Numbered from the stretch's first letter, positions 1,849-62,961 are shown. The stretch is DNA of 64,000 bases from Octopus bimaculoides (GCF_001194135.2 NC_069008.1:16206359-16270358); one strand, 5' to 3'. Numbers and translations are program-made. Notes: generated by a model not told the origin, from the letters alone.

Positions 1849-1973
1849 ACTTCCGTTTCCGCTGCAATTATTGTGGACGAAGAACAACAATAATTTGTTT
1901 TGTATCTTTTGAGGGAAATTTGGTGAAATTAAATCTATTTTCACACTAAATATTGATTTGTATATTATAACAG
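1849..1973 (+). promoter_or_regulatory. Z1 promoter motif and putative non-coding exon 1
   Basis: ACTTCCGTTTCCG at 1849-1861 and donor CAG|GTAAGA at 1973/1974. Matching acceptor TTTCAG|ATTAA at 3696/3697. Module repeated in paralogs. Confidence 0.65.
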
Positions 1974-4072
1974 GTAAGATATACATACATATTTATCTAT
2001 ATACACACAGTAGCGGACATCTTATGCGGCTTCTAGAAATCCCGGAATACTCTGCAATAATATGTATTAATTAGGCACGTGCACGTCTCATAATTTCTTT
2101 AGTCATAATTGACCTGAAACTAGCAAAAGGCTCAACCAAAATATATTTTGATATGGAGTTCTCTTGCGTCTCCCCACTCGGGTGAGGATCTTTCGAATAT
2201 TCCTCTAACTGTTTTTTTTTTTTTTTCTTGGAATTTTCGCAAAATGTTTGTGTCTTTGCATTGTGACTCCGGAATTAATAGGATCGGGCAAAAAAAAAAT
2301 TCCAATTCTTTCGCAATGAGGAATCGAATAAAATGCTTAAAAATAACGGAGGATGAAGTTAGTGGTGGTTGCAGTTCGAAATGCTTGATTAGGGTGAAGG
2401 GTCAAAAGTTTAAAATATGAATTTTAAAATAATTTTGGATTTTTGAGAAACAGCTTGTCTCCTTCCTCCGTTTTCCACAATATAGAATACAATGACATGA
2501 GAGTGGGGGTGTAAAGGTGATGACTATTGTAAAGGCATAAGGAGTGGGGGCAGTGTTTTAAAATGATGCATTTTAAACATTTCTGTTTTAGAAAAAGGTT
2601 TCGCTCATTATTTTGAAAAGCGTAGTACCAAAAATAGTTTGAAAAATCCTGTCGAAAATAAAGAAAATCCAACATAGTTGGAAGTTATTCCAAAAGTTCA
2701 ATCGGCAATCCAGAACGAAGCTATGCCGTGTTCATTCTTGTAATTAATCAAAACAGATGAATCTTTTAATTAACCAAGTGACTTGTGAAGAGAAAAGAAA
2801 TACAAATGTTAATTAATATCAAGCTATTTAATAAGTGAAGCATTTAATTTAAAAGAGGAATTCAAAAAATACATATTACCGTGAGGATATTTAAGATATT
2901 GTCAAAAGAATATTTTCTTTTTTCCTGCAAGTACTGAAAAACCATTTCTGACAAGCTTCACTTTTAATTAAAATAATAGATAGGCTTTTATGGTGGTCTA
3001 CCTTAGTGTAGTGAAACAGGAAAATTGAGATTTCATTCAAAACGGTTTCTGTTTTATCCTAAGAGTCCCTCTGGGCCTTACTTCCCTATGAAATTCATTT
3101 TCATCATCACAAAAAGAAATGGAGATAATTGTAAACAACCACCTCCTTCACCAATCGTAATCTGTCCCCTTTTTATGGGACCATCTTCCATACCAATATA
3201 TCCTGCTCACACACAAGACAAATGTTTTAGCTTTTTTTCATTCAGTTGAAGTTTCGTTGTTCATCTATGTTTTTGCTTGATTTACATGTGGCCACTTCAG
3301 CTGCTAGAAACAACAGCTAAATCCTATGGGTTTTGAAAATTGAACACTATTTGTTGATGTAATCCAGAACGCATAATGTCAGAAGGAACTACAGGATTGT
3401 CATGGCTGGAATGTCATTCACCATAAATGTGCTCAGTCAGGACTGATTTGCTAAACAACAATGACAAATATTATTTTACACTAGTGAAGAATGTTGGTGT
3501 CCACTATTTCAATATGTATGCATAGAAAAATATATATAGATAGATAGATAGATACCAATTTGAAGGTGTAGCTATAGTTTAGAAATATGTTGATTTCACC
3601 CAATGTTATATGATGTCATTTGTTAATAAAGAAATGTTGGAACATTTCCATTTTGATCTCTCCTCTATATCTAATACTGTTTCTTTATCATTTCAGATTA
3701 ACGGATGACATTGGCACAAAACAACTTTTTTAACATTGGACACATCTGGAATATTTATTACTTTTTCTGAGACTAAAGGAGACTGTTTCACACAATAGAT
3801 ATAAAAACACAACTACAATAAATCTGTGGTTGAATTACTGTGAAATATTTGCTCTGATTGAAGATTCATAACAACATTTCTCCATCTCATTATTTCGTGC
3901 TTTTGCATTCTAATTAAACTTGGATAGATTTATGTTTTGACGGCATCTTTAGATATCAGAGTTGATAGCAATTGATATTTCTAAGGAATCTATTATAAGA
4001 AGAACAAGGAGAAAACTATTTGAAGTGGTGAGAAAAAGATAAAGAAAAACTTTAATACTGTGAGAAACTTCA

Positions 4073-4099
4073 ATGATTAGGTCTGTTTTTATCCCTTAA
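4073..4099 (+). promoter_or_regulatory. 8-codon uORF (MIRSVFIP*) ending 4 nt before the Z1 ATG; representative of 8 copies
   Basis: Equivalent uORFs at 19308-19334, 28112-28138, 33797-33823, 39521-39547, 47147-47173, 54550-54576 and 61175-61201. Confidence 0.7.
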
Positions 4100-4103
4100 A
4101 AAA

Positions 4104-5300
4104 ATGTCGAAAGAATTAGGGAAATCATATCACTGTAATATCTGCACTAAATCATTCTCTGAAAAACGTAATCTAACAATTCACAAATGTTTTCATACAA
4201 AAAGGAAGCCTTTTGACTGTGTTACCTGTGGTAAATCATTCACAGAAAATGCTGACTTGACTAAACACAAACGTATTCATACAGGAGAGAAACCATATCA
4301 CTGTGCTATCTGTGGTAAGTCATTCTCTCAAATATCTAACTTGACTAAACACAAACGTATTCATACGAACGAGAAGCCATATTGTTGTGATATCTGTGGT
4401 AAACCATTCTCTCAAATATCTAACATGAATTCTCACAAACGTGTTCATACAAAAGAGAAGCCATTTCACTGTGCTACCTGTGGTAAATCATTCTCTCAAA
4501 TATCTAATTTGACTTCTCATAAACGTATTCATACAGGTGAGAAGACATATCACTGTAATACCTGTGGTAAATCATTCTCTGCAGGTGGTGACTTAACTAC
4601 TCACATGCGTATTCATACTGGAGAGAAACCATATCACTGTGATGTCTGTGGCAAAGCATTCACTACAAGTAGTGCTTTAACTTCTCACAGACGTATTCAT
4701 ACAGGTGAAAAGCCATATCACTGTGATACCTGTGGTAAATCATACCGTAGAAGTGGTGACTTGACTAAACATACTCGTATTCATACAGGTGAGAAGCCAT
4801 TTCATTGTGATACCTGTGCTAAATCATTCTCTGAAAACGGTGCCTTAACTAAACATAAACGTATTCATACGGGAGAGAAGCCACATCACTGTGATGTCTG
4901 TGGTAAATCATTCTCTCAAATGTCTAACTTAACTTCTCACAAACGTATTCATACAGGAGAGAAGCCATTTCATTGTGAAATATGTGATAAATCATTCTCT
5001 GCAAGTACTGCATTGACTTCTCACATACGTATTCATACAGGAGAGAAGCCATATCACTGTGGCATTTGTGATAAGTCTTTCCCTGTAAGCAGTGCCTTAA
5101 CATTTCATGAACGTATTCATACAGGAGAGAAGCCATTTCACTGTGATGTCTGTGGTGAATTGTTCTCGGCAAGTGGTGCTTTAACTTCTCACAGACGTAT
5201 TCACACAGGAGAGAAGCCATTTCACTGTGATACCTGTGGTAAATCATTTTCTCAAAAAGGTAACTTAAAGACACACATGTCTATCCATACAAAGTTATGA
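4104..5300 (+). CDS. Z1: C2H2 zinc-finger protein, 14 tandem fingers, no effector domain
   Basis: 398-aa ORF of 28-aa C-x2-C-x12-H-x3-H repeats with HTGEKP linkers. ATG at 4104, TGA at 5298-5300, ends SIHTKL. Confidence 0.95.
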
Positions 5301-11929: not shown

Positions 11930-12664
<735 letters not shown>

Positions 12665-14741
12665 TCACCACAGCATATAATTTCTTCTTTCTTGTTATAA
12701 TTTATTCCTTAGAAATATTTCTACTGATATCAACTGTGATTTTATCGATATCTAAAAGTCTGCAAACTCCTTTGCAAATATATTCAACTTTAATTAGAAT
12801 GCAAAAGCACCAGATAATGAGATGCAGAAATGGTGCTATGAATCTTCGCTCAGAGCAAATATTTCACAGTAATTCCAGTCTAGATTTATAGCAGTTGGGT
12901 TATTATATCTGTTCTCTCAAACGTTTTCTTTTAGTCTTTAAAAAAATTATAAATATTCCATATGTATCCAATGTTAAAAAAGTTATTTTGTGCCAAAGTC
13001 ATCCATTAATCTGAAATAATAAAGAAACAGTATTAGATATAGAGGAGAGATTAAAATGGAAATGTTACAACATTGATTAACAAAAGACATCATTTAACAT
13101 TGGGTGAAATCTAAACATTTGTAAACTACAGCTACACCTTCACATTGTGTAACACACATATCTATATAAATCGCAGTGTCTTCAGAGTTCATCTGGCTCT
13201 GATTTCCAGTACTGTAATTAACAACTAAAGTTGTCGTGAGTGTGTCATTCCATGTCCTTTGGTGAAACTTAGTCTACTTAGGAACATTCTGCTCAACATG
13301 GCTCACTGTAGCGTAGTGTTGTGTGNNNNNNNNNNNNNNNNNNNNNNNNNNNNNNNNNNNNNNNNNNNNNNNNNNNNNNNNNNNNNNNNNNNNNNNNNNN
13401 NNNNNNNNNNNNNNNNNNNNNNNNNNNNNNNNNNNNNNNNNNNNNNNNNNNNNNNNNNNNNNNNNNNNNNNNNNNNNNNNNNNNNNNNNNNNNNNNNNNN
13501 NNNNNNNNNNNNNNNNNNNNNNNNNNNNNNNNNNNNNNNNNNNNNNNNNNNNNNNNNNNNNNNNNNNNNNNNNNNNNNNNNNNNNNNNNNNNNNNNNNNN
13601 NNNNNNNNNNNNNNNNNNNNNNNNNNNNNNNNNNNNNNNNNNNNNNNNNNNNNNNNNNNNNNNNNNNNNNNNNNNNNNNNNNNNNNNNNNNNNNNNNNNN
13701 NNNNNNNNNNNNNNNNNNNNNNNNNNNNNNNNNNNNNNNNNNNNNNNNNNNNNNNNNNNNNNNNNNNNNNNNNNNNNNNNNNNNNNNNNNNNNNNNNNNN
13801 NNNNNNNNNNNNNNNNNNNNNNNNNNNNNNNNNNNNNNNNNNNNNNNNNNNNNNNNNNNNNCCTTTGAGATGATATTCTAAAAGATATATTTTATACTTC
13901 ATTGTGATTAACAATGCATAAGGCGGCGAGCAGCCACAATCGTTTATACTGTGGACGGAATGCTTAGTGGTATTTCGCACGTCCCTATGTACTGAGTTCA
14001 AACTCCGCCGACGTCGACTTTATTTTTCATCCTTTTGGGGGTCGATGAAATAAGTACCATGGAAATACTGGACTCTGTGTAATCGACTCATTCCCTTCTC
14101 CCTCGTGGCATAATTTGAAACCATTACTATTAACATTGCTCAACTTGTATTCATCGTCACCAGTCTGTGAAGTATATTTTAAACACACAAGCTTGCACTC
14201 TCTCGTTGACTACCTTCAGACATCAAAGTCAATGGGAAATTAATTACAGGTATGAAATGCCGTGTTCTGGCATGACTTTCGGCAACCTTGTGGAACGTAA
14301 AGTTTTAGCGAATGTTGGCGGGGATAATTGGACGTAGAAATGTCCGAAAAGCGGTCACTCATCCTCTTTGTATAAACCGGACAAAACCTTCCGAATGGAA
14401 GGTGTTTCTGCATGTATTAACACATTAAGCGCGAAGGGCCACCATCGTGGCCGTCAAGCACAGGTCGACAGGCTACGATCGTGGCCCAGATAGATGCATT
14501 TAAGGGCGTTCGTTGGGGTCTAATGTCACTCAAACGCTCCAATACCCCGCCCCCAGAATGCGAGAAGACTAACAGTTCAACTAATGGCTTTTCAGATTAT
14601 GTAAAACTTACCACCATTATATACTAAGATATTTTAAACTATTCGTTGTTTTTTATGTGTGCACGGTAGTCTCATCTTCATAAAATGTGCTCAGCAGTCC
14701 ATGCTGTGTAAATGCAAATCCCATCGCTTTATATGTTAAAT

Positions 14742-17616: not shown

Positions 17617-19303
<1,687 letters not shown>

Positions 19304-21634
19304 TTCTCTAAGGGATACAAAGAAACCCAACCATTGAAGTTTCTCACAGTATTAAAATTTTCCCTTATCTTCTCTCACCACAGCATATAATTTCCTTTCT
19401 CTTCTTCTTCTTCTTGTTATAATTTATTCCTTAGAAATATTTCAAGTATTATCAACTGTGATTTTATTGATATCTAAAATTCTGCAAACCCCTTTGTAAA
19501 TATATTCAAGTTCAGATCAGAGCAAATATTTCACAGTAATTCCAGTCTAGATTTATTGCAGTTGGGTTATTATATCTCTTCTCTAAAGCATTTTCTGTTA
19601 GTCTTTAGAACATGATAAATATTCCAGATGTATCCAATGTTAAAAAAGTTGTTTTGTGCCAAAGTCATCCATTAATCTGAAATAAAGAAACAATATTAGA
19701 TATAGAGGAGAGATTAAAATGGAAATGTTGCAACATTTCTATACTGATTAACAAATGACATCATATAACATTGGGTGAAATCTAAAAATTTGTAAACTCC
19801 AACTACACCCTCACAGTGTGTAACATTTTATCTGTCAGGCACACTGTGGCCACCAACAGAATGTTATAGTCAAATCTTCTGAGTGTCTGACAATATATGC
19901 TTAGATTGCAAATAAAAGTGTAAGGGGGGGGGGGCTAGCTGTTTGCATGATGATAGCATTTATTGTTTAATCTCCAATCATCATCAACCAAGGGGCAACA
20001 GTTTGGCGTGCAGCTGTCTTCAAGAATTTTGCGTTTCTCATTTTCACCGTCTCTTCGTTGCATGGTGTGTCGTTTTAGATTTCACTCTTTTACTTGTTTC
20101 AGTCTTTTGACTGTGGCCATGCTGGAGCACCGCCTTTAGTCGAGCAAATCGACCCCAGGACTTAGTCTTTNNNNNNNNNNNNNNNNNNNNNNNNNNNNNN
20201 NNNNNNNNNNNNNNNNNNNNNNNNNNNNNNNNNNNNNNNNNNNNNNNNNNNNNNNNNNNNNNNNNNNNNNNNNNNNNNNNNNNNNNNNNNNNNNNNNNNN
20301 NNNNNNNNNNNNNNNNNNNNNNNNNNNNNNNNNNNNNNNNNNNNNNNNNNNNNNNNNNNNNNNNNNNNNNNNNNNNNNNNNNNNNNNNNNNNNNNNNNNN
20401 NNNNNNNNNNNNNNNNNNNNNNNNNNNNNNNNNNNNNNNNNNNNNNNNNNNNNNNNNNNNNNNNNNNNNNNNNNNNNNNNNNNNNNNNNNNNNNNNNNNN
20501 NNNNNNNNNNNNNNNNNNNNNNNNNNNNNNNNNNNNNNNNNNNNNNNNNNNNNNNNNNNNNNNNNNNNNNNNNNNNNNNNNNNNNNNNNNNNNNNNNNNN
20601 NNNNNNNNNNNNNNNNNNNNNNNNNNNNNNNNNNNNNNNNNNNNNNNNNNNNNNNNNNNNNNNNNNNNNNNNNNNNNNNNNNNNNNNNNNNNNNNNNNNN
20701 NNNNNNNNNNNNNNNNNNNNNNNNNNNNNNNNNNNNNNNNNNNNNNNNNNNNNNNNNNNNNNNNNNNNNNNNNNNNNNNNNNNNNNNNNNNNNNNNNNNN
20801 NNNNNNNNNNNNNNNNNNNNNNNNNNNNNNNNNNNNNNNNNNNNNNNNNNNNNNNNNNNNNNNNNNNNNNNNNNNNNNNNNNNNNNNNNNNNNNNNNNNN
20901 NNNNNNNNNNNNNNNNNNNNNNNNNNNNNNNNNNNNNNNNNNNNNNNNNNNNNNNNNNNNNNNNNNNNNNNNNNNNNNNNNNNNNNNNNNNNNNNNNNNN
21001 NNNNNNNNNNNNNNNNNNNNNNNNNNNNNNNNNNNNNNNNNNNNNNNNNNNNNNNNNNNNNNNNNNNNNNNNAACCCTGTAGTTATGCCAAAAAGAGTAC
21101 ATACTTGTTGTAATTTGGTTATCTATAGTCCGATGATATTTCGGAATTACAATTCCTTCTTCAGATCTTCTTAGCTGGAGTCTCAATAATTTATAGAATT
21201 AAACAGAAGCGTGCTTTCCGGAATACGGTGCAGAAGCATTTCATGATGGGGTAAAACAATGTCCTAAATGAATGAGAGTTTACAAATCCAAAGAAAGTGT
21301 ACGCAGCAGAATAAAACATCACTTACTGTTACGAAACAATGTGGAACATGATAAATGTTCAAATAATCCGTAGACAGTTATCAAGTTCTAGAATATTCTT
21401 CTATTATATATTTTCTCCGTGGGATTGAGTTGAGACACAAATATAATACATATTATTCGCTTGACATCCTCGTCAACAAGAGACAGGAGGTAGCGTGTAT
21501 CTATGCGCGATGCTGGCTGTTGATTGAACCAACCAAATCACGCAGAGCTGGATGCAGATATTGACAAAGGGAAAGTAGTCCTCCAACAGGTTGAACGAAA
21601 TCTACTTTATTTATATGTAGTAATTATCATGTTA

Positions 21635-21986
21635 GTGGAGGCGCAATGGCCCAGTGGTTAGGGCAGCGGACTCGCGGTCGTAGGATCGATTCCCAGACCG
21701 GGCGTTGTGAGTGTTTATTGAGCAAAAACACCTAAAGCTCCACGAGGCTCCGGCAGAGGATGGTGGCGAACCCTGCTGTACTCTTTCACCACAACTTTCT
21801 CTCACTCTTTCTTCCTGTTTCTGTTGTGCCTGTAATTCAAAGGGTCAGCCTTGTCACACTGTGTCACGCTGAATATCCCCGAGAACTACGTTAAGGGTAC
21901 ACGTGTCTGTGGAGTGCTCAGCCACTTGCACGTTAATTTCACGAGCAGGCTGTTCCGTTGATCGGATCAACTGGAACCCTCGACGT
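21635..21986 (+). mobile_element. SINE family A (GTGGAGGCGCAATGG head), about 350 bp
   Basis: tRNA-like head (TGGCCCAGTGG...GATCGATTCC). Near-identical copies at 5746-6067(+), 10611-10952(-) and 42393-42750(+). Halves at 26196-26370(-) and 35768-36005(-). Confidence 0.85.
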
Positions 21987-26048: not shown

Positions 26049-26368
26049 TGTTCAAGTCAATTAAAGTTCGAAGGAATACTGTGAAGAACAAAAATGCATC
26101 GTTGGTGATATGTGTTGAAGAGTGTTTGGTAAGTTCACAGGTAGTTTATTATAGTTCGGATGCATATAGTTTTAGACAGCTTGGTGGACCAAAGTTATTG
26201 TTGGCACTCCGTCGCTTACGACGTCGAGGGTTCCAGTCGATCCGATCAATGGAACAGCCTGCTAGTGAAATTAACGTGCAAGTGGCTGAGCACTCCACAG
26301 ACATGTGTACCCTTAACGTAGTTCTCGGGGATATTCAGCGTGACACAGTGTGACAAGGCTGACCCTTT

Positions 26369-28107: not shown

Positions 28108-30729
28108 TTCTCTAAGGGATACAAATAGACACAACCATTGAAGTTTCTCACAGTAATAAATTTTCCCCTTATCTTTCTTCTCTCACCACAGCATATAATT
28201 TCCTTTTTCTTGTTATAATTTATTCCTTAGAAATATATCTGCTGCTATCAACTGATTTTACCAATATCTAAAATTCTGCAAAAGCACCAGGTAATGAGAT
28301 GAAGAAATGTTGGTATTTATCTCAAGTCAGAGCAAATCTGCTCTCTAAAACATTTTCCTTTGGTCTTTAAAACATGATTAATATGTCAGATGTATCCAGT
28401 GTACAAAAGTTGTTTTATGCCAACGTCATCCATTAATCTGTAACAAAAAAGAAACAGTATTAGATATACAGGAGATATCAAACTGGAAGTGCTGCAATAT
28501 TTCAAATGACATCACATAATATTGGGTGAAATCTAAAAATTTGCAAATTACAATTACACCTCCACATTGTGTGTGTATATATAGCAGTTGAATAAATTTA
28601 AAACATATTCTGGTTTTCACATTTTTTATTATGGTATTTTAGCAAAATTAGCGCTTTCATGCATAGTATACTCATGAGATTTCTAATGTGTTTAACTGAC
28701 AGTTGAGTTCTTGACAACTTTAGTACCTCTTAGAACGCACCAACCAGCTGAATTTTTCAAATACCTTTTGATCAATCCGCAATAAAAACAACACCACAAT
28801 CACAACTGATATTTATTACAGACACACAGACACACCAGTATCCAGATTTAAAATCATGTCACCTAACACACACAAAATGCAACATCCCATACTGTCTAAC
28901 CAGGAAAATTTGTACTATAGTTTAATGATGCAAATACCAGAAACACATGATTTATAGAACTCAAAGGGTCTCTGCTCAAGCAAAATTACCCTCTCCTACT
29001 TATAGAAAATACTATACAACAGCCGACAGCATGAAAATAGGTCATACAAATTGTTATTAATATTGGAAAAAATTCTAAGTTTCCAACATTTTTATGATAG
29101 AGAGTTAAGAGAAGTTATATTGTGTAAGAGAGTGAATTCAATATGTATTTCAGTTCCAAATGTTATGAAGCACGCGTTATGGTTAAATTACTTTATACAG
29201 TTATAATATTTAGACAATGGTTTCTTCAAAATGTTAGGATTAAGAGAAAAACCAAGAATGAATAGTGAGAGAGGGGTTTGGAGGAGTAAAGTTGAAAAAA
29301 GTGTGACACACTGACAATTGCTTTCGCATTTATTATTATAGATATGAATGTTTTGAAAATCATTAGCAAAATCTAAAACGACATACCACGTAACGAAGAG
29401 AGGGCAAAAATGAGACAGAAAAAATTCTCAAAGACAGCTGCATGCCAAACTATTGCTCATTGCTTGATGATGATGATTAAAATTTAACCAACAAAACACG
29501 ATCACCATGCAAACGGCAACGGCCCTCTTACACTTTCATTCGCAAACTAGGCATATAGTCAGACATGCAGTAGGCTTGACTATAACATTCTGTTGTTGGT
29601 CACTGCATGCCTGACTATATATATGTATATATATATATATATATNNNNNNNNNNNNNNNNNNNNNNNNNNNNNNNNNNNNNNNNNNNNNNNNNNNNNNNN
29701 NNNNNNNNNNNNNNNNNNNNNNNNNNNNNNNNNNNNNNNNNNNNNNNNNNNNNNNNNNNNNNNNNNNNNNNNNNNNNNNNNNNNNNNNNNNNNNNNNNNN
29801 NNNNNNNNNNNNNNNNNNNNNNNNNNNNNNNNNNNNNNNNNNNNNNNNNNNNNNNNNNNNNNNNNNNNNNNNNNNNNNNNNNNNNNNNNNNNNNNNNNNN
29901 NNNNNNNNNNNNNNNNNNNNNNNNNNNNNNNNNNNNNNNNNNNNNNNNNNNNNNNNNNNNNNNNNNNNNNNNNNNNNNNNNNNNNNNNNNNNNNNNNNNN
30001 NNNNNNNNNNNNNNNNNNNNNNNNNNNNNNNNNNNNNNNNNNNNNNNNNNNNNNNNNNNNNNNNNNNNNNNNNNNNNNNNNNNNNNNNNNNNNNNNNNNN
30101 NNNNNNNNNNNNNNNNNNNNNNNNNNNNNNNNNNNNNNNNNNNNNNNNNNNNNNNNNNNNNNNNNNNNNNNNNNNNNNNNNNNNNNNNNNNNNNNNNNNN
30201 NNNNATGATTATCATGATATATAGATGAAATCATATACATATATCTATCCATTTACCCCTCTCTCTCTTTTCGAAAAATGTTTTTTTTTTTTTCTAATCC
30301 CTTTCCCATCTTCCTCTCTGGACCGATTCTGATTAATTTTGTGGCCACTACACGATTAAAAACTAGAGGAGAAGCCTTTTTAGAAAAAAAAAAAAAAAAT
30401 TCTGGCGAAAGCGCGTGTGATTTAATGGAAGTTTGGTCGTTGTTTCTAGCACATCCCATGACCGGTAAGGTGTAGTAGGGTTCATAAAATCAAAAATTTT
30501 CAAAACAATTTCTTAATAGCATAATTGAATTTCTGCTATTAACGGGGAGAAAATACTGAAAACCATCAACCAATACTTGTCAAGAGTGACAAAGAAACGA
30601 GGAAGGTGGCAGTTGGATATGCTAGAAGCAACAGTCAAATCGCCCTTTAACCACACCCCTTTACGTACGAAAACATTTACTGTTTTTACCGAAAAGGCTT
30701 CGGTGGAGATGGAGTATGTAATCTAGGTA

Positions 30730-31647: not shown

Positions 31648-31780
31648 CTGTTATGCTATACAAATCAATATTTAGTGTGAAAAATATATTTACTCACATC
31701 AAAATCTCCGTGAAAACACAAAAACACGTTATTGTTTATTCTTTCTTTCAAGTCAAAAATGTTGAAACGGAAACGGAAGT
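31648..31780 (-). promoter_or_regulatory. Z4 promoter motif and putative exon 1
   Basis: CGGAAACGGAAGT at 31768-31780 and minus-strand donor CAG|GTAAGA at 31648/31647. Acceptor at 28438/28437. Confidence 0.65.
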
Positions 31781-32074: not shown

Positions 32075-32205
32075 ACTTCCGTTTCCGTTACAATCTTTTT
32101 TGACTCTGGGGGAAAATAACGATAACGTGTTTTTCTGTTTTCGCGGAGGTTTGGTGTGAGTAAATATATTTTTCACACTAAATATCGATTTGTAAAGCAT
32201 TGCAG
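32075..32205 (+). promoter_or_regulatory. Z5 promoter motif and putative exon 1
   Basis: ACTTCCGTTTCCG at 32075-32087 and donor CAG|GTAAGA at 32205/32206. Acceptor at 33403/33404. Confidence 0.65.
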
Positions 32206-33827
32206 GTAAGATATACACACCTATCTATCGATTTATCGTACTTACCGGACCTTTTGTCCGACTTACAGAAATCCACGAGAGTATTCGGTTTTCCCCACCC
32301 GTCTCTGAAGGTGACCGGGTTTCCCGCTTTACACTTTGTGGGTCCTGAGGGACTGTGGCCTTCCGTGCCGCCTCCCCCTCTCTTTAGCTTCTCTGGTCAT
32401 ATCTAATTCAGATTGCTTTACTCCAGAGCACACAACACTACGCTACAGTGAGCCATGTTGAGCAGAATGTTCCTAAGTAGACTAAGTTTCACCAAAGAAC
32501 AAGTGGAATGACACTCTAAAGACAACACAAGTAATTTCCTATTTTATGTCCGTATAATAAATTCACAATTTAAATTGCACCAATATGTATGTATATATAT
32601 ATATGTATATATATAAACATATACATACACATACAGATTTATATATACATATATATNNNNNNNNNNNNNNNNNNNNNNNNNNNNNNNNNNNNNNNNNNNN
32701 NNNNNNNNNNNNNNNNNNNNNNNNNNNNNNNNNNNNNNNNNNNNNNNNNNNNNNNNNNNNNNNNNNNNNNNNNNNNNNNNNNNNNNNNNNNNNNNNNNNN
32801 NNNNNNNNNNNNNNNNNNNNNNNNNNNNNNNNNNNNNNNNNNNNNNNNNNNNNNNNNNNNNNNNNNNNNNNNNNNNNNNNNNNNNNNNNNNNNNNNNNNN
32901 NNNNNNNNNNNNNNNNNNNNNNNNNNNNNNNNNNNNNNNNNNNNNNNNNNNNNNNNNNNNNNNNNNNNNNNNNNNNNNNNNNNNNNNNNNNNNNNNNNNN
33001 NNNNNNNNNNNNNNNNNNNNNNNNNNNNNNNNNNNNNNNNNNNNNNNNNNNNNNNNNNNNNNNNNNNNNNNNNNNNNNNNNNNNNNNNNNNNNNNNNNNN
33101 NNNNNNNNNNNNNNNNNNNNNNNNNNNNNNNNNNNNNNNNNNNNNNNNNNNNNNNNNNNNNNNNNNNNNNNNNNNNNNNNNNNNNNNNNNNNNNNNNNNN
33201 NNNNNNNNNNNNNNNNNNNNNNNNNNNNNNNNNNNNNNNNNNNNNNNNNNNNNNNNNNNNNNNNNNNNNNNNNNNNNNNNNNNNNNNNNNNNNNNNNNNN
33301 NNNNNNNNNNNNNNNNNNNNNNNNNNNNNNNNNNNNNNNNNNNNNNNNNNNNNNNNNNNNNNNNNNNNNNNCTATATCTAATACTGTTTCTTTATTATTT
33401 CAGATTAATGGATGACATTGGCACAAAACAACTTTTTTAAGTTTGGATACATCTGGAATATTGATAATTTTTTTAAAGACTAGAGGAAAATATAGAGAAC
33501 AGATATAATAACCCAACTGCAATAAATCTAGACTGGAATTACTGTGAAATATTTGCTCTGAGCGAAGATTCATAGCACCATTTCTGCATCTCATTATCTG
33601 CTGCTTTTGCATTCTAATTAAACTTGAATATCTTTGCAAAGGAGTTTGCAGAATTTTAGATATTGATAAAGTCACAGTTGATAGCAGTTGAAATATTTCT
33701 GGGGAATAAATTATAACAATAACAAGAAGAAGGAAATTATATGCTGTGGTGAGAGACGAAGGATAAGGGAAAAATTTAATATTGTGAAAAACTTCAATGG
33801 TTGGATGCATTTGTATCCCTTAGAGAA

Positions 33828-39516: not shown

Positions 39517-40029
39517 TTCTCTAATGGATAAACATATATCCAACCATTGAAATATTTAGAAATATTTCTACTGCTATTAAGTTATGGATATCCAAAATTG
39601 TGCAAACTGCTTTGTAAATATATTCAAGTTTAATTAGAATGCAAAAGCACCATGTGATAAGAGGGAGAAATGTTGCTATGAATCTCAGCTTAGGGAAAAT
39701 ATTTCACAGTAATTCAACCCTAGATTAATAGCAGTTTATATCTGTTCTTTAAAACATTTTCCTTTGGTCTTGAAAAAGATGGTAAATATTCCAGATGTAT
39801 CCAAACTTAAAAAAGTTGTTTCATGCCAAAGTCATCCGTTAATCTGAAATAATAAAGAAACAGTATTAGATATAGAGGAGAGATCAAAACGGAAATGTTT
39901 CAATATTTCTTTATTGATTAACAAATGATATCACATAACATTGGGTGAAATCTAACGATTTGTAAACCACAACTACACCTCCAACTTGTGTTTGTGTGTC
40001 CGTATCAACGTTCAGAAGAGCAGAGAAGA

Positions 40030-42093: not shown

Positions 42094-42201
42094 CTGTGAT
42101 TTAGTGTGAAAATATATTTACTCACCAAATGTCCGTGAAAACAGCAGAAGCACGTTATTGTTATTCGCCCGTGTCAAACAGATTCTAGCGGAAACGGAAG
42201 T
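42094..42201 (-). promoter_or_regulatory. Z6 promoter motif and putative exon 1
   Basis: CGGAAACGGAAGT at 42189-42201 and donor at 42094/42093. Acceptor at 39844/39843. Confidence 0.65.
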
Positions 42202-45789: not shown

Positions 45790-47142
45790 TCACACTTTTA
45801 CATGGATAGATGCATGTGTAGTAATGTTACGTTTCTGAGAGAATGATCTACTTGATCTCAGCTTTTCTCTTGTATGAATATGTTTGTGTCTAGTTAAGGT
45901 GCCTTTTATAGAGAATGTTTTTCCACAGGTATCACAATGAAATGGCTTCTCACCTGTATGAATATATTTGTGTGTAATTAAGCTATTTTTTGCAGAGAAT
46001 GATTTACCACAAATATCACAGTGATATGGCTTCTCTCCTGTATGAATACGTTTGTGACTACTTAAGTGATTCCTTTGAGAGAATGATTTACCACAGGTAT
46101 TACAGTGAAATGGCTTCTCACCTGTATGAACATATTTGTGTTTAATTAAGTTACATTTTACAGAGAATGATTTACCGCAGGTATCACAGCGAAATTGTTT
46201 CTCACCTGTATGAATATATTTGTGTCTAATTAAGCTACCTTTTGCAGAGAATGATTTACCACAGATATCACAGTGATGTGGTTTCTCTCTTGTATGAACA
46301 CGTATGTGTTTATTTAAGGAATTCTGTTCAGAGAATGATTTACCACAGGTATCACAGTGAAATGGCTTCTCACCTGTATGAATACGTATGTGTCTGTTAA
46401 AATTATTCTTTCTAGAGAATGATTTACCACAGGTATCACATTTAAATGGCTCATCACCTGTATGAATATAAGTGTGTGCAAGTAAGTTACAGTTTGTAGA
46501 GAATGATTTACCACAGATACAATGATATGGTTTCTCTCCTGTATGAATACGTATGTGTTTAGTTAACTTATTCTTTTCTGAGAATGATTTACCACAGGTA
46601 TCACAGTGAAATGGCTTCTCACCTGTATGAACATATTTGTGTATAATTAAGCGACGTTTTGAAGAGAATGATTTACCACAGGTATCACATTGAAATGGCT
46701 TCTCACCTGTATGAGTATATTTGTGTGTAAGTAAGCTACCCCTTCCGGAGAATGATTTACCACAGGTATCACAGTGAAATGGCTTCTCACCTGTATGAAT
46801 ATATTTGTGTGTAATTAAGCTATTCTTTTCAGAGAATGATTTACCACAGAAATCACAGTGATATGGTTTCTCTCCTGTATGAATATGTTTGTGTTTACTT
46901 AATTTATTCTTTTCACAGAATGATTTACCACAAATATCACAATGATATGGTTTCTCTCCTGTATGAATACTTAAGTGCTGACTTAAGCCATTCTTTTGAG
47001 AGAATGATTTACCACAGGTATCACAGCGAAATGGCTTCTCACCTGTATGAACACGAATGTGTTTAACCAAGTTACTACTTGTAGAGCTTGATTTACCACA
47101 AATTTTACAACAATATCGTAATTTTCCTAATGCTTTTGACAT
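45790..47142 (-). CDS. Z7: C2H2 zinc-finger protein, 15 fingers plus a Cys-less terminal remnant
   Basis: Intact ORF from ATG 47142. One finger is C-x1-C (YHCICGK). Ends [28 protein letters not shown]. Confidence 0.93.
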
Positions 47143-49259
47143 TTCTCTAAGGGATACAAATAAATCCAACCATTGAAGTTTCGAAATATTTCTGCTGCTA
47201 TCAAGTTATGGATATCTAAATTTGTGGAAATTGCTTTGCTAATATATTCAAGTTTAATTAGAATGCAAAAGCACCAGGTGTTATGAGGGAGAAATGTTGC
47301 TATGAATCTCAGCTTAGGGAAAATATTTCACAGTAATTCAACCCTAGATTTATAGCACTTTATATCTGTTCTCTAAAACATTTTCCTTTCATCTTCAAAA
47401 AACATGGTAAATATTCCAGATGTATCCAATGTACAAAATGTCGTTTTATACCAATGTCATCTGTTAATCTGAAATAATAAAGAAACAGCATTTAAATACA
47501 AAGGGGAGATCGATATGGAAATGTTATAACATATATTGATTAACAAATGATATCATGTAACATTGGTTGAAATCTGAAGGAGTAGAGACGGACTATATGT
47601 AATCTGAACCTTTACCCCCCCCCCTTATTTATTAATTTTTTAAATGGAATCCCACATTTTAGGCTATGGAGATTCCGATTCTGAAAAAAAAATTGTTTGA
47701 AAAATTTCAATCCCCTCCCCGCCAAGCAGGCTATTTACATGCTAGAAATAACAGCCAAATCTCACAAAACTAGTGTTAGGGTTAGGGTTAGAGTTAGGGT
47801 CAGGGTTAGGGTTAGGGTTTGAGTTAGGGTTAGGTTTACCCTGTGGATCTATANNNNNNNNNNNNNNNNNNNNNNNNNNNNNNNNNNNNNNNNNNNNNNN
47901 NNNNNNNNNNNNNNNNNNNNNNNNNNNNNNNNNNNNNNNNNNNNNNNNNNNNNNNNNNNNNNNNNNNNNNNNNNNNNNNNNNNNNNNNNNNNNNNNNNNN
48001 NNNNNNNNNNNNNNNNNNNNNNNNNNNNNNNNNNNNNNNNNNNNNNNNNNNNNNNNNNNNNNNNNNNNNNNNNNNNNNNNNNNNNNNNNNNNNNNNNNNN
48101 NNNNNNNNNNNNNNNNNNNNNNNNNNNNNNNNNNNNNNNNNNNNNNNNNNNNNNNNNNNNNNNNNNNNNNNNNNNNNNNNNNNNNNNNNNNNNNNNNNNN
48201 NNNNNNNNNNNNNNNNNNNNNNNNNNNNNNNNNNNNNNNNNNNNNNNNNNNNNNNNNNNNNNNNNNNNNNNNNNNNNNNNNNNNNNNNNNNNNNNNNNNN
48301 NNNNNNNNNNNNNNNNNNNNNNNNNNNNNNNNNNNNNNNNNNNNNNNNNNNNNNNNNNNNNNNNNNNNNNNNNNNNNNNNNNNNNNNNNNNNNNNNNNNN
48401 NNNNNNNNNNNNNNNNNNNNNNNNNNNNNNNNNNNNNNNNNNNNNNNNNNNNNNNNNNNNNNNNNNNNNNNNNNNNNNNNNNNNNNNNNNNNNNNNNNNN
48501 NNNNNNNNNNNNNNNNNNNNNNNNNNNNNNNNNNNNNNNNNNNNNNNNNNNNNNNNNNNNNNNNNNNNNNNNNNNNNNNNNNNNNNNNNNNNNNNNNNNN
48601 NNNNNNNNNNNNNNNNNNNNNNNNNNNNNNNNNNNNNNNNNNNNNNNNNNNNNNNNNNNNNNNNNNNNNNNNNNNNNNNNNNNNNNNNNNNNNNNNNNNN
48701 NNNNNNNNNNNNNNNNNNNNNNNNNNNNNNNNNNNNNNNNNNNNNNNNNNNNNNNNNNNNNNNNNNNNNNNNNNNNNNNNNNNNNNNNNNNNNNNNNNNN
48801 NNNNNNNNNACATTAGGTTAGCACAATTTTGTGTGATTTGGCTGTTATTTCTAGCATGTGGCTAACCTGCTTGAAAGCCTGAGGTATAAATACTGTTTTT
48901 TAAATATTTTTTTTTTTTGAAAAATTGAAATTTTACAAATTTCTCTCAAAATCGTAATCTTCGTATTTTTCTACGTATTTCACACACACACACACAAAAG
49001 AGAAATTTCTAGAAAAAGTGAAAAATAAATGGTATTCTTTTGATATGAATTAGATATGACCAGAGAAGCTAAAGACAGCACGGAAGGTCACAGTCCTTCG
49101 GGACCCACAAAGTGTAAAGATGAAAACCTGGACATCTTGAGAGACAGGAAGGGCGGAACCGAATACTCAATACACGGTATAAGTATTCCCGGATTTCTGG
49201 AAACCAGATAAGAGATCCGGCATGTACGATCAATCGATAGATAGGTGTGTATATCTTAC

Positions 49260-49363
49260 CTGTTATGCTATACAAATCGATATTTAGTGTGAAGATATAT
49301 TCAATCACACCAAAACCTCCGTGGAAACATACAAGTCAAAGAGATTGTAAGGGTAACGGAAGT
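49260..49363 (-). promoter_or_regulatory. Z7 promoter motif (single ETS core) and putative exon 1
   Basis: GGGTAACGGAAGT at 49351-49363 and donor at 49260/49259. Acceptor at 47469/47468. Confidence 0.6.
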
Positions 49364-53354: not shown

Positions 53355-54545
53355 TCACACTTTCACATGGATAGACTTATGTCTAGTTAATTTACTTCTT
53401 TGAGAGAATGATTTACTACAGACATCACAGTGATATGGTCTCTCCCCTGTATGACTACGTTTGTGTATAGTTAAGTTGGGCCTCTGAGAGAATGATTTAC
53501 CACAAATATCACAGTGATATGGTTTTTCACCGGTATGTATACGATTATGTATCGTTAAGGCATACCTTTGAGTGAATGACTTGCTACAGATATCACAGCG
53601 ATATGGTCTCTCTCTTGTATGAATACGTTTGTGTTTAAACAAGTCAGAGATAACAGAGAATGATTTACCACAGATATCACAATCATATGGTGGTTCTCTC
53701 GTATGAATAAGCTTGTGTCTAGTCAACTGACTACTCACAGAGAATGATTTACCACAGACATCACAATGAAATCGCTTTTCTCCAGTATGAATAAGTTTGT
53801 GCGTAGTTAAGCTACATTTTGCAGAGAATGATTTACCACAGATATCACAATGATATGGTTTCTCTCCCGTATGAATACGTCTGTGTTTAGTCAAGTCACC
53901 AATTCGAGAGAATGATTTATCACAGACATCACAGTGAAATGGCTTTTCTCCTGTATGAATACGTATGTGTTTAGTTAAGCTACCTTTTGTAGAAACTGAT
54001 TTACCACAGATAACACAGTGAAATGGCTTTTCTCCTGTATGAGTACGTTTGTGTGTAGTCAAGTCATTACTCCTAGAGAATGATTTACCACAGATAACAC
54101 AGTGAAATCGCTTTTCACCTGTATGAACATATTTGTGCGAAATTAAATAATCTTTTGTAGAGAATGAGTGACCACAAATAACACAGTGAAATGGCTTCTC
54201 TCCTGTATGAATATGCTTGTGTCTTTTTAAGTTACCTTTCAAAGAGAATGATTTACCACAGGTATCACAGTGAAATGGCTTCTCACCTGTATGAATACGC
54301 ATGTGTTGTCTTAAGTTATCGTTTTGAGAGAATGACTTACCACAGGTATCACAGTGATATGGTTCCTCTCCTGTATGAATACGATTGTGTATTCTTAATT
54401 TAGCATTGTGACAAAATGATTTACCACAGATAACACAGCGAAATGGCTTCTCACCTGTATGAACAGGACTGTGTTGAATCAAATTACTATGTCTAGAGAA
54501 TGATTTACCACAAATTTTACAATGATATCCCAATGCGTTTGCCAT
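53355..54545 (-). CDS. Z8: C2H2 zinc-finger protein, 14 fingers
   Basis: Intact [17 protein letters not shown]...SIHVKV*. ATG at 54545. Confidence 0.93.
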
Positions 54546-55109
54546 TTCTCTAAAAGATACAAATAAATCCAACCATTCAAGTTTTTCAAAGTATTAAATT
54601 TTTCCCTTATCCTTCTTTTCTCAACATAGCGTATAATTTTCGTATTCTTGGTTTTGTTATAATTTATTCCTAAGAAATATTTCTGCTGCTATCAAGTTAT
54701 GGATATCTAAAATTGTGTAAACTGTTTTGCAAATATATTCAAGTTCAATTAGAATGCAAAAGCACCTGATAATGAAATGGAGAAATGCTGCTATAAATCT
54801 CAGCTCACAGGAAATATTTCATAGTAATTCAAACCTATATTTATAGCAGTTGGGATATCATATTTGCTCTCTAAAACATTCTCGTTATGGTTTTCAAAAA
54901 ACATGGTAAATATTCCAGATGTATGCAACGTACATTTTTTCTGTGCCAATGCCATCCATTAATCTGAAATAATAAAGAAACAGAATTAGATATAGAGGAG
55001 AGATCAAAACGGAAATGTTCCAACATTTCTTTATTGATTAACAAATGACATCATATAACAGGGTGAAATCTAAAAATTTGTGAATCACAACTAGACCTAG
55101 ACATTGAGT

Positions 55110-57437: not shown

Positions 57438-57566
57438 CTGTCATGCTATACAAATCAATATTTAGGGGCAAAATATGTTTACTCACATCAAAATATCCGT
57501 GAAAACATACAAAAAGACGTTATTATTATTCACCAAATTGAAACAGCTTTTAGCGGAAACGGAAGT
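57438..57566 (-). promoter_or_regulatory. Z8 promoter motif and putative exon 1
   Basis: CGGAAACGGAAGT at 57554-57566 and donor at 57438/57437. Acceptor at 54964/54963. Confidence 0.65.
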
Positions 57567-61170: not shown

Positions 61171-61735
61171 TTCTCTAAGAGATACAAATAAATCCAACCA
61201 TTCAAGTTTTTCAAAGTATTAAAGTTTTCCCTTATCCTTTTTTTCTCAACACAGCGTATAATTTTCTTATTCTTGGTTTTGTTATAATTTATTCCTAAGA
61301 AATATTTCTGCTGCTATCAAGTTATGGATATCTAAAATTGTGTAAACTGCTTTGCAAATATATTCAAGTTCAATTAGAATGCAAAAGCACCAGACAATGA
61401 AATGGAGAAATATTGCTATGAATCTCAGCTCACAGCAAATATTTCACAGTAATTCAACCATAGATTTCTAAAGGTTGGGTTATTATATCTGTTCTCTTAA
61501 ACGTTTTCCTTTAGTCTTTAAGACATGATAAATATTCCAGATGTATCCAATGTTAAAAAAGTTGTTTCATGCCAATGTCATCCATTAATCTGAAATAATA
61601 AAGAAACAGTATTAGATATGGAGGAGAGATCAAAACGGAAATGTTCCAACATTTCTTTATTGATTAACAAATGACATCATATAACATAGGGTGAATTCTA
61701 AAAATTTGTGAATCACAATTACCCCTAGCCATTGA

Positions 61736-62833: not shown

Positions 62834-62961
62834 CTGTTATGCTATACAAATCGATATTTAGTGTGAAAATATATGTACTCTGATCAAAATCCATGAAAAC
62901 ATAGAAAAACACGTTATTGTTTATTCTCCAGATTGAAAAAGCTTTTAGCGGAAACGGAAGT
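62834..62961 (-). promoter_or_regulatory. Z9 promoter motif and putative exon 1
   Basis: CGGAAACGGAAGT at 62949-62961 and donor at 62834/62833. Acceptor at 61590/61589. Confidence 0.65.

What the first reader, a model, noticed from the sequence alone, without database searches (positions are those of the whole stretch)
4073..4106. Family-wide 8-codon uORF stopping exactly 4 nt before the main ATG
Seen in 8 of 9 paralogs: [56 protein letters not shown] and MVGFICIS*. ATG, length, stop and the 4-nt spacer (AGAA, or AAAA in Z1) are invariant while internal codons change. The divergent Z1 uses TAA instead of TAG at the same place. Established: reinitiation after a uORF is inefficient over very short spacers. 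Inference: a shared translational brake on the cluster. The UAG stop is also an ADAR-preferred triplet, so editing could extend the uORF out of frame over the main start. Shared ancestry alone could explain part of the conservation.
Basis: partly seen in the sequence, partly recalled or inferred. Interest (0 to 1): 0.75.

Follow-up and report, generated by a model that had tools for sequence, protein, structure and literature searches.

The report
Leader mini-ORF in octopus zinc-finger genes
Eight of nine neighbouring octopus zinc-finger genes do carry the same 8-codon mini reading frame ending 4 bases before their start codon. It looks like an inherited leftover of a decayed protein N-terminus in the mRNA leader, not a demonstrably selected control element.

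Summary
The window is Octopus bimaculoides chromosome CM046628.1, holding nine tandem C2H2 zinc-finger genes (Z1-Z9). The pattern ATG-21 nt-stop-4 nt-ATG is present exactly as described in 8 of 9; Z2 has CAG instead of the upstream ATG.

I could obtain no transcript data, so everything about splicing is inferred from sequence.
- **Gene structure:** each gene has a non-coding exon 1 with a perfect donor (AACAG|GTAAGAT) 1.6-3.5 kb upstream. A canonical acceptor lies 326-424 nt before the start codon and is conserved in five subfamilies and three species. The mini-ORF is therefore probably exonic, in the mature 5' leader.
- **Origin:** in two related subfamilies the homologous stretch is translated as an N-terminal extension in the main frame. 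The mini-ORF is thus a decayed coding remnant, absent from all other subfamilies examined.
- **Conservation:** it is unremarkable. The window ranks at the 81st percentile within the leader, and neutral simulation gives P≈0.09.
- **Rivals not excluded:** a leaky translational damper remains plausible. So does use of the same TTAG as an alternative 3' splice site.
- **ADAR idea:** it has no support from local RNA folding.

Verdict: ordinary, low interest.

The parts
4073..4099 (+). Z1 mini-[11 protein letters not shown], stop TAA, spacer AAAA (the finding)
12630..12656 (-). Z2 homologous stretch: CAG replaces the upstream ATG (no uORF); TAG+AGAA kept
19308..19334 (-). Z3 mini-ORF MVGFLCIP*
28112..28138 (-). 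Z4 mini-ORF MVVSICIP*
33797..33823 (+). Z5 mini-ORF MVGCICIP*
39521..39547 (-). Z6 mini-ORF MVGYMFIH*
47147..47173 (-). Z7 mini-ORF MVGFICIP*
54550..54576 (-). Z8 mini-[11 protein letters not shown]
61175..61201 (-). Z9 mini-ORF MVGFICIS*
3697..4103 (+). Z1 inferred 5' leader part of exon 2, starting right after the conserved branch point + pyrimidine tract + TTTCAG acceptor
12626..13010 (-). Z2 inferred exon-2 leader
19304..19676 (-). Z3 inferred exon-2 leader
28108..28437 (-). Z4 inferred exon-2 leader
33404..33827 (+). Z5 inferred exon-2 leader (assembly gap lies just upstream)
39517..39843 (-). Z6 inferred exon-2 leader, carrying a deletion of about 93 alignment columns that ends roughly 34 nt before the main ATG
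47143..47468 (-). Z7 inferred exon-2 leader (same deletion as Z6)
54546..54963 (-). Z8 inferred exon-2 leader
61171..61589 (-). Z9 inferred exon-2 leader
1850..1973 (+). Z1 candidate non-coding exon 1: CTTCCGTTTCC (ETS-like) motif to the last base before the donor CAG|GTAAGA
31648..31779 (-). Z4 candidate exon 1 with donor AACAG|GTAAGAT; head-to-head with the Z5 copy
32076..32205 (+). Z5 candidate exon 1 with donor
42094..42200 (-). Z6 candidate exon 1 with donor
49260..49362 (-). Z7 candidate exon 1 with donor
57438..57565 (-). Z8 candidate exon 1 with donor
62834..62960 (-). Z9 candidate exon 1 with donor
4104..5300 (+). Z1 main ORF, 398 aa, 14 C2H2 fingers; annotated CDS starts at this ATG
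11930..12625 (-). Z2 main ORF, 231 aa
17897..19303 (-). Z3 main ORF, 468 aa
27412..28107 (-). Z4 main ORF, 231 aa
33828..34607 (+). Z5 main ORF, 259 aa
38905..39516 (-). Z6 main ORF start; ORF interrupted by assembly gaps
45790..47142 (-). Z7 main ORF, 450 aa, 14 fingers
53355..54545 (-). Z8 main ORF, 396 aa
60136..61170 (-). Z9 main ORF, 344 aa (this exact product is not on record as a gene model)

Best explanation
The 8-codon mini-ORF is a real sequence feature of one young tandem cluster of C2H2 zinc-finger genes in Octopus bimaculoides.

Gene structure (inferred from sequence; no transcripts were seen): each gene has a short non-coding exon 1 lying 1.6-3.5 kb upstream of the start codon. 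An intron follows, ending at a deeply conserved acceptor 326-424 nt before the start codon. One large exon then carries a long leader plus the whole coding sequence. The mini-ORF lies in that leader, so it is most likely present in the mature mRNA.

Origin: the last ~75 nt of the leader is the decayed remnant of an N-terminal coding extension that sister subfamilies still translate in the same frame.
- The upstream ATG is an old out-of-frame ATG, overlapping a Cys codon (xxA TGT) in those subfamilies.
- The TAG is a derived change.
- The present start codon is a newly adopted ATG, the 11th codon before the first zinc-finger cysteine.

The nine copies share the mini-ORF mainly by descent.

Effect (inferred from general scanning rules, not shown): ribosomes that start at the weak-context upstream ATG terminate 4 nt before the main ATG and mostly fail to reinitiate. 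The element would then act as one leaky damper among several upstream ATGs. Nothing shows that it is kept by selection.
For: Identity and annotation:
- Searches place the window on GCA_001194135.2 CM046628.1 and show annotated single-exon CDSs starting at the main ATG.
- Pfam finds only C2H2 fingers.

Exon 1:
- Seven paralogs have a block in gene orientation ending in AACAG|GTAAGAT, preceded by CTTCCGTTTCC.
- The same donor context occurs upstream of an O. sinensis relative.

Acceptor:
- A branch-point-like CTAAT/CTTAT, a 13/16 pyrimidine tract and TTTCAG|A are conserved in all 9 paralogs and in subfamilies S, V, X and Y from three species.
- Similarity between subfamilies jumps at the CAG. 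Exon-side z is 17-38 and intron-side z is <=2 for Z-S and Z-V; S-V is 27 versus 7. Pairs involving X or Y show a weaker jump, none, or the reverse.

Coding remnant:
- V (MENELYRSEVECK...IDFSDEE...) and X (MMEDKLCENKVTCK...) translate the stretch homologous to the Z leader in the Z main frame.
- V codon 5 TTA corresponds to Z TAA and S TGA.

Clade-limited: no uORF ends at -4 in S, V or X. In S the TAG is preceded by an in-frame TGA with no ATG between them.

No excess conservation.

Other upstream ATGs: 3-9 per leader, one of them retained 9/9.
Against: - No transcript, junction or ribosome data could be obtained, so exon status is inferred.
- With indels included, the neutral probability falls to about 0.03-0.05. 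That leaves room for some constraint on the ~40 nt before the start codon.
- All three large leader deletions (Z2, Z6, Z7) stop 34-38 nt before the main ATG.
- ATG is the most depleted trinucleotide in the proximal 240 columns (17 observed, 42 expected), and 8 of the 17 are this one, so it stands out as tolerated or kept. The nine copies are not independent.
- The same 20 nt also look like a 3' splice site. A tract with 10-13 of 16 pyrimidines, TAG and no upstream AG is seen here; sites with >=12 of 16 occur only 1.16 times per kb per strand.
- Leaders of S and V carry 6-15 upstream ATGs, near the random expectation. That is unusual for efficiently translated mRNAs.
Confidence: 0.5

Rival explanations
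1. Selected translational brake. The mini-ORF is maintained by selection because it captures scanning or reinitiating ribosomes and releases them too close to the main ATG to reinitiate. This would hold down protein output of the whole cluster.
For: - The segment is probably exonic.
- It is retained in 8/9 copies without any indel, while the rest of the leader has about 23 gap intervals.
- The neutral probability is about 0.09, or about 0.04 with indels.
- It is the only widely kept ATG in an otherwise ATG-poor proximal 240 nt.
- TAG>TAA in Z1 keeps a stop.
Against: - It is absent in sister subfamilies S, V and X.
- Z2 lost the ATG yet keeps an intact 231-aa ORF.
- The peptide is not conserved.
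- The ATG has T at -3, a weak context (sequence).
- 19% of leader windows are at least as conserved.
- TAG>TAA is the single most likely change at that G.
- The pattern was picked after seeing it.
Confidence: 0.2
2. 3' splice acceptor. TTTGTATCCCTTAG|AGAAATG is the end of the 5'-UTR intron, or of an alternative or second intron. The mini-ORF would then be intronic, and its 'stop' would simply be the acceptor AG.
For: - A pyrimidine tract of 10-13 of 16, TAG and no upstream AG are present in 8/9 copies; such sites (>=12 of 16) are rare, at 1.16 per kb per strand.
- A perfect donor exists upstream in exon 1.
- Variation in the last uORF codon is almost all pyrimidine-to-pyrimidine (CCT, CTC, TTT, TCT).
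- TAG + 4 nt + ATG is shared with subfamily S.
- Splicing here would give a clean leader, whereas the long leader carries 3-9 upstream ATGs.
- Z1 lost both AGs but gained TTAG|G 20 nt upstream.
Against: - A stronger acceptor, conserved across five subfamilies, lies 326-424 nt upstream, and cross-subfamily conservation starts exactly there.
- The homologous stretch is coding in V and X.
- S has the TAG but no pyrimidine tract.
- Z1 lacks the AG yet keeps an intact 398-aa, 14-finger ORF.
- The nearby GGTGAG 'donor' is ancestral sequence. It also sits just before the X start codon, is changed in Z8, Z9 and S, and is deleted in Z6 and Z7.
Confidence: 0.2
3. ADAR switch. A-to-I editing of the UAG stop (read as UGG) extends the mini-ORF out of frame across the main start codon and so tunes repression.
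For: - The arithmetic is right. Reading TAG as TGG extends the frame over the main ATG; in Z7 it runs 14 more codons to TAA (sequence).
- UAG is the preferred ADAR triplet (established knowledge).
Against: - No stable local duplex is predicted around the site in five paralogs (z-scores -0.8 to +1.5).
- There is no Rfam match.
- Editing in squid is reported as enriched in coding sequence and 3' UTR relative to 5' UTR and introns (PMC9068888).
- Z1 has UAA, which needs two edits.
Confidence: 0.02

Closest known systems
Inhibitory upstream ORFs that end very close to, or overlap, the main start codon (Kozak's reinitiation-distance experiments; yeast GCN4 uORF4; mammalian ATF4 uORF2). Recalled from my own knowledge.
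   Same: - A short ORF in the 5' leader, out of frame with the main ORF.
- It stops too close to the main AUG for efficient reinitiation.
- Other short uORFs lie further upstream.
   Different: - No evidence here of translation, stress dependence or selection.
- Positions of the upstream uORFs vary between paralogs.
- The element is confined to one recent paralog cluster, and its peptide is not conserved.
Canonical metazoan 3' splice site (branch point, pyrimidine tract, YAG)
   Same: - TTTGTATCCCTTAG followed by an A-rich exon-like start.
- No AG in the preceding 18 nt.
- A usable donor exists upstream.
   Different: - A better acceptor, conserved family-wide, lies ~400 nt upstream.
- The homologous stretch is coding in related subfamilies.
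- The AG is lost in Z1 without loss of the ORF.
Lineage-specific tandem expansions of C2H2 zinc-finger genes in cephalopods (PMC9068888 and work cited there)
   Same: - Tandem clusters of multi-finger genes with the whole finger array in one exon.
- Multi-exon genes by virtue of a 5' non-coding exon.
   Different: Those papers, as far as I could read them, do not describe the leader structure, the shared acceptor, or the N-terminal truncation seen here.
N-terminal truncation by start-codon shift after a nonsense mutation, which turns former coding sequence into 5' UTR
   Same: - A stop (TAA in Z, TGA in S) sits at the codon that is TTA in subfamily V.
- The ancestral ATG is lost in Z and kept as a 4-codon uORF (MEVE*) in two of the four S genes.
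- A new downstream ATG is used.
   Different: The direction of change (loss in Z/S versus gain in V/X) is inferred by parsimony from a few loci, not from a rooted phylogeny.

Membership tests
Regulatory upstream ORF | Upstream ATG with an in-frame stop before the main ATG | tested here: met
   Present in 8 of 9 paralogs; always 8 sense codons and a 4-nt spacer.
Regulatory upstream ORF | Lies in the mature mRNA leader | tested here: inconclusive
   Inferred from the conserved acceptor 326-424 nt upstream and from coding homologs. No transcripts were obtainable: 12 contig look-ups returned genome records only.
Regulatory upstream ORF | ATG and stop retained above the neutral rate and across related genes | tested here: inconclusive
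   Within the cluster, P≈0.09 from substitutions only, or about 0.04 with indels, and the window ranks at the 81st percentile. Across subfamilies S, V and X it is not retained.
Regulatory upstream ORF | Ribosome initiation at the upstream ATG and a measurable effect on the main ORF | not testable with these tools
   Needs ribosome profiling or reporter assays.
3' splice acceptor | YAG preceded by a pyrimidine tract with no intervening AG | tested here: met
   8 of 9 copies have a 10-13/16 pyrimidine tract plus TAG. Z1 has TAA.
3' splice acceptor | A matching upstream donor | tested here: met
   The exon-1 donor AACAG|GTAAGAT is present in 7 paralogs. It would serve either acceptor.
3' splice acceptor | Conserved as an acceptor in related genes | tested here: not met
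   The stretch is coding in V and X, and S lacks the pyrimidine tract. By contrast, the acceptor ~400 nt upstream is conserved in five subfamilies.
3' splice acceptor | Junction reads in RNA | not testable with these tools
   No RNA data are accessible.
ATF4/GCN4-type delayed-reinitiation leader | A permissive upstream uORF plus a last inhibitory uORF abutting or overlapping the main ORF | tested here: inconclusive
   Several uORFs occur per leader, and one ATG just inside exon 2 is kept 9/9. However, lengths and positions vary.
ATF4/GCN4-type delayed-reinitiation leader | Stress (eIF2 phosphorylation) dependent translation | not testable with these tools
   Experimental.
ADAR editing site | Site embedded in a double-stranded RNA structure | tested here: not met
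   Local 150-nt folds are no more stable than shuffles. Long-range pairing was not tested.
C2H2 poly-zinc-finger gene | Tandem C2H2 fingers with TGEKP-type linkers | tested here: met
   Pfam zf-C2H2 and zf-H2C2_2 hits at E down to 1e-119, with no KRAB, SCAN or other effector domain; finger counts.

The most novel reading that the evidence does not exclude
The same ~40 nt could be dual-purpose. Choice between the conserved acceptor ~400 nt upstream and the TTAG 5 nt before the main ATG would produce either a long, uORF-laden, poorly translated leader or a short clean one. The mini-ORF would then be the last gate of a splice-switchable translational control shared by a young zinc-finger cluster.
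Probability: 0.08. Interest if true: 0.5.

Novelty: new member of a known kind. Interest (0 to 1): 0.2.

Why it matters
If it were a selected element, it would show that newly duplicated octopus zinc-finger genes are held at low protein output by a shared leader device. That would bear on how very large transcription-factor expansions are tolerated. As it stands, the finding mainly illustrates a trap: young tandem paralogs share whole leaders by descent, so a repeated uORF is not evidence of function on its own. The useful by-product is a gene model for this family: a non-coding exon 1, a deeply conserved acceptor, a long leader, and an N-terminal extension lost in some subfamilies. Existing RNA-seq can test this model directly.

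Tried and rejected
1. **Full-length protein search.** It was swamped by vertebrate zinc-finger proteins and returned no octopus relatives.
2. **Profile of the N-terminal 60 aa.** It returned only fragments of <=105 aa. Some of these gave useful loci: L004-L009.
3. **Exact-sequence cluster look-up.** The window proteins are not in that collection.
4. **Contig look-ups (all 12 used).** None returned a transcript-derived contig.
5. **Albertin et al. 2015.** The paper is not held.
6. **Mini-intron GTG|GTGAGA ... TTAG|AGAA (~71 nt).** Rejected. GGTGAGAG is ancestral sequence also found just before the X start codon. It is changed in Z8, Z9 and S and deleted in Z6 and Z7.
7. **O. vulgaris gene models P0124 and P0136, which seemed to splice into this region.**
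   - P0124's first exon is the antisense strand of a neighbouring gene's conserved acceptor block.
   - P0124's TAG is 7 nt away from the Z position.
   - I therefore did not use either model as evidence.
8. **Reading the block ~400 nt upstream as a CCAAT/TATA promoter.** Dropped once exon 1 with its donor was found and the CCAAT proved absent in V.
9. **Searching for a conserved donor between the upstream acceptor and the mini-ORF** (a three-exon model). None was found.
10. **Rfam on the whole window.** No match.
11. **Literature search for uORFs in octopus.** Nothing relevant.

Full report
**What the window is.** Exact-protein look-ups place the window on Octopus bimaculoides GCA_001194135.2, chromosome CM046628.1, at about 16.206-16.270 Mb. 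It holds nine tandem multi-finger ORFs, which I call Z1-Z9; two are on the + strand and seven on the − strand. Pfam finds only C2H2 fingers and no KRAB, SCAN or other effector domain. The tool reports CDS ranges only, so it says nothing about UTR exons.

**The observation.**
- Window 4073-4106 reads ATG ATT AGG TCT GTT TTT ATC CCT TAA, then AAAA, then ATG.
- Z2 has CAG for the upstream ATG but keeps TAG+AGAA.
- The same scan also hits six unrelated places. Five are on the antisense strand of finger arrays, so the bare pattern is not rare in this window.
- The sequence facts stand. 'Invariant' is too strong: the ATG is lost in Z2, and the stop and spacer are changed in Z1.

**Is it conserved more than its surroundings?**
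- About 600 nt upstream of each start codon aligns across all nine copies.
- The focal 34-nt window has mean column identity 0.908, against 0.83 for all 543 windows of the leader. Nineteen percent of windows are at least as conserved, and the best-conserved block lies about 400 nt upstream.
- I built a neighbour-joining tree from the leader, excluding the focal window. Total length was 0.71 substitutions per site and transitions roughly equalled transversions.
- I then evolved the consensus 34-mer neutrally along that tree. The uORF stayed intact in at least 8 of 9 leaves in 8.8% of 20,000 runs. The ATG alone survived in >=8 leaves in 37%, and a stop survived in 9/9 in 21%.
- The leader has about 23 gap intervals in 404 columns. 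The absence of a frame-breaking indel adds a factor of about 0.45.
- The combined neutral probability is therefore a few percent for a pattern chosen after inspection. That is compatible with descent plus mild constraint on the bases next to a start codon. It does not single out the uORF.

**Gene structure.**
- Self-comparison of the window showed a block 1.6-3.5 kb upstream of Z1 and Z4-Z9, always in the orientation of its gene. Z4 and Z5 lie head to head, with an inverted pair of these blocks.
- The block contains CTTCCGTTTCC (two ETS-like TTCC cores). About 125 nt later it ends in AACAG|GTAAGAT, a consensus 5' splice donor kept in all seven copies. It holds at most one ATG (ATGTGA).
- The same ...GTAGCATAACAG|GTAAGAT is found 3.9 kb upstream of a related O. 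sinensis gene. A 5'-UTR intron therefore almost certainly exists.
- For Z2 the region falls in an assembly gap. For Z3 no copy was found in the window.

**Where that intron ends.**
- The most conserved part of the upstream region is CTAATAC-TGTTTCTTTATTATTTCAG|ATTA. This is a branch-point match, a 13/16 pyrimidine tract, no intervening AG and a CAG. It lies 326-424 nt before the start codon in all nine copies.
- I fetched related loci through short octopus zinc-finger proteins found: subfamily S (O. sinensis, L004), V (O. vulgaris, L005-L007), X (O. vulgaris, L009) and Y (O. sinensis, L008).
- All carry the same pyrimidine tract + TTTCAG|A at 165-750 nt before their start codons.
- Similarity between subfamilies changes sharply at the CAG. 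Local alignment z-scores for the 200 nt downstream are 38 (Z-S), 17 (Z-V) and 27 (S-V). For the 200 nt upstream of the branch point they are 1.8, −0.2 and 6.6. Pairs involving X or Y show a weaker jump, none, or the reverse.
- That is the signature of an intron-exon boundary. I therefore infer that the finger exon starts there and that the mini-ORF lies within its 5' leader.

**What the stretch is.**
- In V the annotated protein begins MENELYRSEVECKRESEEIDFSDEEQNEKGKTSFDCDICGK. In X it begins MMEDKLCENKVTCK....
- The DNA encoding these N-terminal residues is homologous, codon for codon and in the same frame as the Z main ORF, to the last ~75 nt of the Z leader. V has L-Y-R-S-E-V-E-C-K where Z3 has *-Y-C-E-K-L-Q-W-L.
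- V codon 5, TTA, corresponds to TAA in Z and TGA in S (S2 and S3).
- The V/X start ATG survives in S2 and S3 as a 4-codon uORF (ATG GAA GTT GAA TGA) and is lost in Z.
- The Z/S start codon occupies the 11th codon before the first finger cysteine, where V has GAA.
- The Z upstream ATG is the out-of-frame ATG inside 'GAA TGT' (V) or 'ACA TGT' (X). There it is followed at once by TAA.
- The Z TAG corresponds to 'T GAT' in V.

By parsimony (an inference from few loci), Z and S descend from a gene whose N-terminal extension was cut off, turning former coding sequence into leader. The mini-ORF is an accidental product of that decay. Consistent with this, no uORF ends 4 nt before the start codon in S, V or X. 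In S the shared TAG has an in-frame TGA three codons upstream with no ATG between them.

**Likely effect.**
- Under the inferred structure, the mature leader is about 125 nt of exon 1 plus 326-424 nt of exon 2, carrying 3-9 upstream ATGs per paralog.
- The most widely kept of these is not the focal one. It is an ATG 5-9 nt inside exon 2 (ATGAC, preceded by G), retained 9/9 in Z and also present in V and X.
- The focal ATG has T at −3 and usually G at +4. The main ATG has G at −3 (read).
- By general scanning rules (established knowledge, not tested here), many ribosomes would skip the focal ATG. Those that use it would terminate 4 nt before the main ATG and reinitiate poorly.
- A partial, leaky damping effect is thus plausible.
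- ATG is the most depleted trinucleotide in the proximal 240 alignment columns (17 observed, 42 expected from dinucleotide shuffles), and eight of the 17 are the focal ATG. This hints that the proximal leader is under some selection against upstream ATGs and that this one is tolerated or kept. However, the nine sequences are far from independent.

**The splice-site rival.**
- The last 20 nt of the mini-ORF (TTTGTATCCCTTAG|A) also make a respectable 3' splice site. Sites with >=12/16 pyrimidines, YAG and no upstream AG occur only 1.16 times per kb per strand here.
- Changes in the last codon are almost all pyrimidine to pyrimidine.
- Splicing there would give a clean short leader.
- Against it: the stronger, family-wide acceptor upstream; the coding status of the homologous stretch in V and X; the lack of a pyrimidine tract in S; and loss of both AGs in Z1, which still has an intact 398-aa, 14-finger ORF.
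- I keep this rival at about 0.2, including use as an alternative acceptor.

**The ADAR suggestion.** The arithmetic is correct: reading TAG as TGG runs the frame across the main ATG. However, 150-nt folds around the site in five paralogs are no more stable than shuffled sequence, and Rfam finds nothing. The squid editing survey reports relative depletion of editing in 5' UTRs (PMC9068888).

**Verdict.**
It is a clade-specific leader uORF inherited by a young tandem cluster and sitting in decayed coding sequence. It may damp translation, but there is no evidence of selection.
- Novelty: a new member of a known kind.
- The main uncertainty is the lack of any transcript data. Junction counts from existing RNA-seq would settle the exon/intron question at once.

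Noticed in passing
window 1850-1973(+), 31648-31779(-), 32076-32205(+), 42094-42200(-), 49260-49362(-), 57438-57565(-), 62834-62960(-); L004 ~6000-6128: A candidate non-coding exon 1 and promoter for seven of the nine genes. It has a tandem ETS-like CTTCCGTTTCC motif, about 125 nt, then a perfectly conserved donor AACAG|GTAAGAT. Z4 and Z5 share a head-to-head inverted pair. A homolog with the same donor lies upstream of an O. sinensis relative.
   Followed up: yes
window 3657-3696(+) and the equivalent 40 nt before 13010, 19676, 28437, 33404, 39843, 47468, 54963, 61589; L004, L005-L007, L008, L009: A branch point + pyrimidine tract + TTTCAG|A acceptor is conserved in five zinc-finger subfamilies from three Octopus species. 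Cross-subfamily similarity starts sharply at the CAG for Z-S, Z-V and S-V.
   Followed up: yes
window 3702-3708(+) in Z1 and the equivalent 5-9 nt inside exon 2 of every paralog: The most deeply conserved upstream ATG is not the focal one. It is the ATG in ATGAC (preceded by G) just after the acceptor. It is kept 9/9 in Z and is also present in subfamilies V and X; the segment is deleted in S. Its ORF length varies from 4 to 51 codons.
   Followed up: partly
L005:21590, L006:9263(-), L007:9411(-), L007:18267(-), L009:4059 and 16461 versus window leaders: Subfamilies V and X encode an N-terminal extension (V: MENELYRSEVECKRESEEIDFSDEE, acidic) that Z and S have lost. V has TTA at the position where Z has TAA and S has TGA. 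No Pfam domain covers the extension.
   Followed up: partly
window 13230-13325, 31334-31431, 32429-32526, 41763-41860 (partial copy near 57151-57203): A 98-nt block inside the inferred first intron is about 94-96% identical between paralogs whose flanks are about 80% identical. There is no Rfam match, and the fold is no more stable than shuffles. Unexplained; it may be a recent gene-conversion tract or a transposon fragment.
   Followed up: partly
window 5245-5278(-), 34048-34081(-), 39347-39380(+), 54301-54334(+), 61001-61034(+); also 8793-8826(+): The pattern ATG-21 nt-stop-4 nt-ATG also occurs five times on the antisense strand of finger arrays (MC[LVC].K..F* followed by [12 protein letters not shown]...) and once in a TG-rich simple repeat. 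The bare pattern is therefore not rare here.
   Followed up: yes
window 39517-39843(-), 47143-47468(-), 12626-13010(-): Z6 and Z7 share a leader deletion of about 93 alignment columns, and Z2 has one of about 36. All three stop 34-38 nt before the main ATG, so the last ~35-40 nt are never deleted.
   Followed up: partly
window 17897-19303(-), 60136-61170(-), 37324-39516(-): Z3 and Z9 end inside a finger rather than with the ...H[VT]K[VL] tail of the other copies, so they may be truncated. Z6 is broken by assembly gaps (runs of N), and its deposited model splices across them.
   Followed up: no
window 5867-6067, 10610-10952, 21635-21976, 26221-26371, 35769-36006, 42393-42728: An interspersed repeat of about 340 nt is present in both orientations at 87-97% identity between the genes. 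It is probably a SINE-like element; several other repeat families also fill the intergenic DNA.
   Followed up: no
L006:10001-10037 and L006:1358-1394: The first exon of the short O. vulgaris gene model P0124 is the antisense strand of a neighbouring gene's conserved acceptor block. This small model looks artefactual, and the related short model P0136 may be too.
   Followed up: partly
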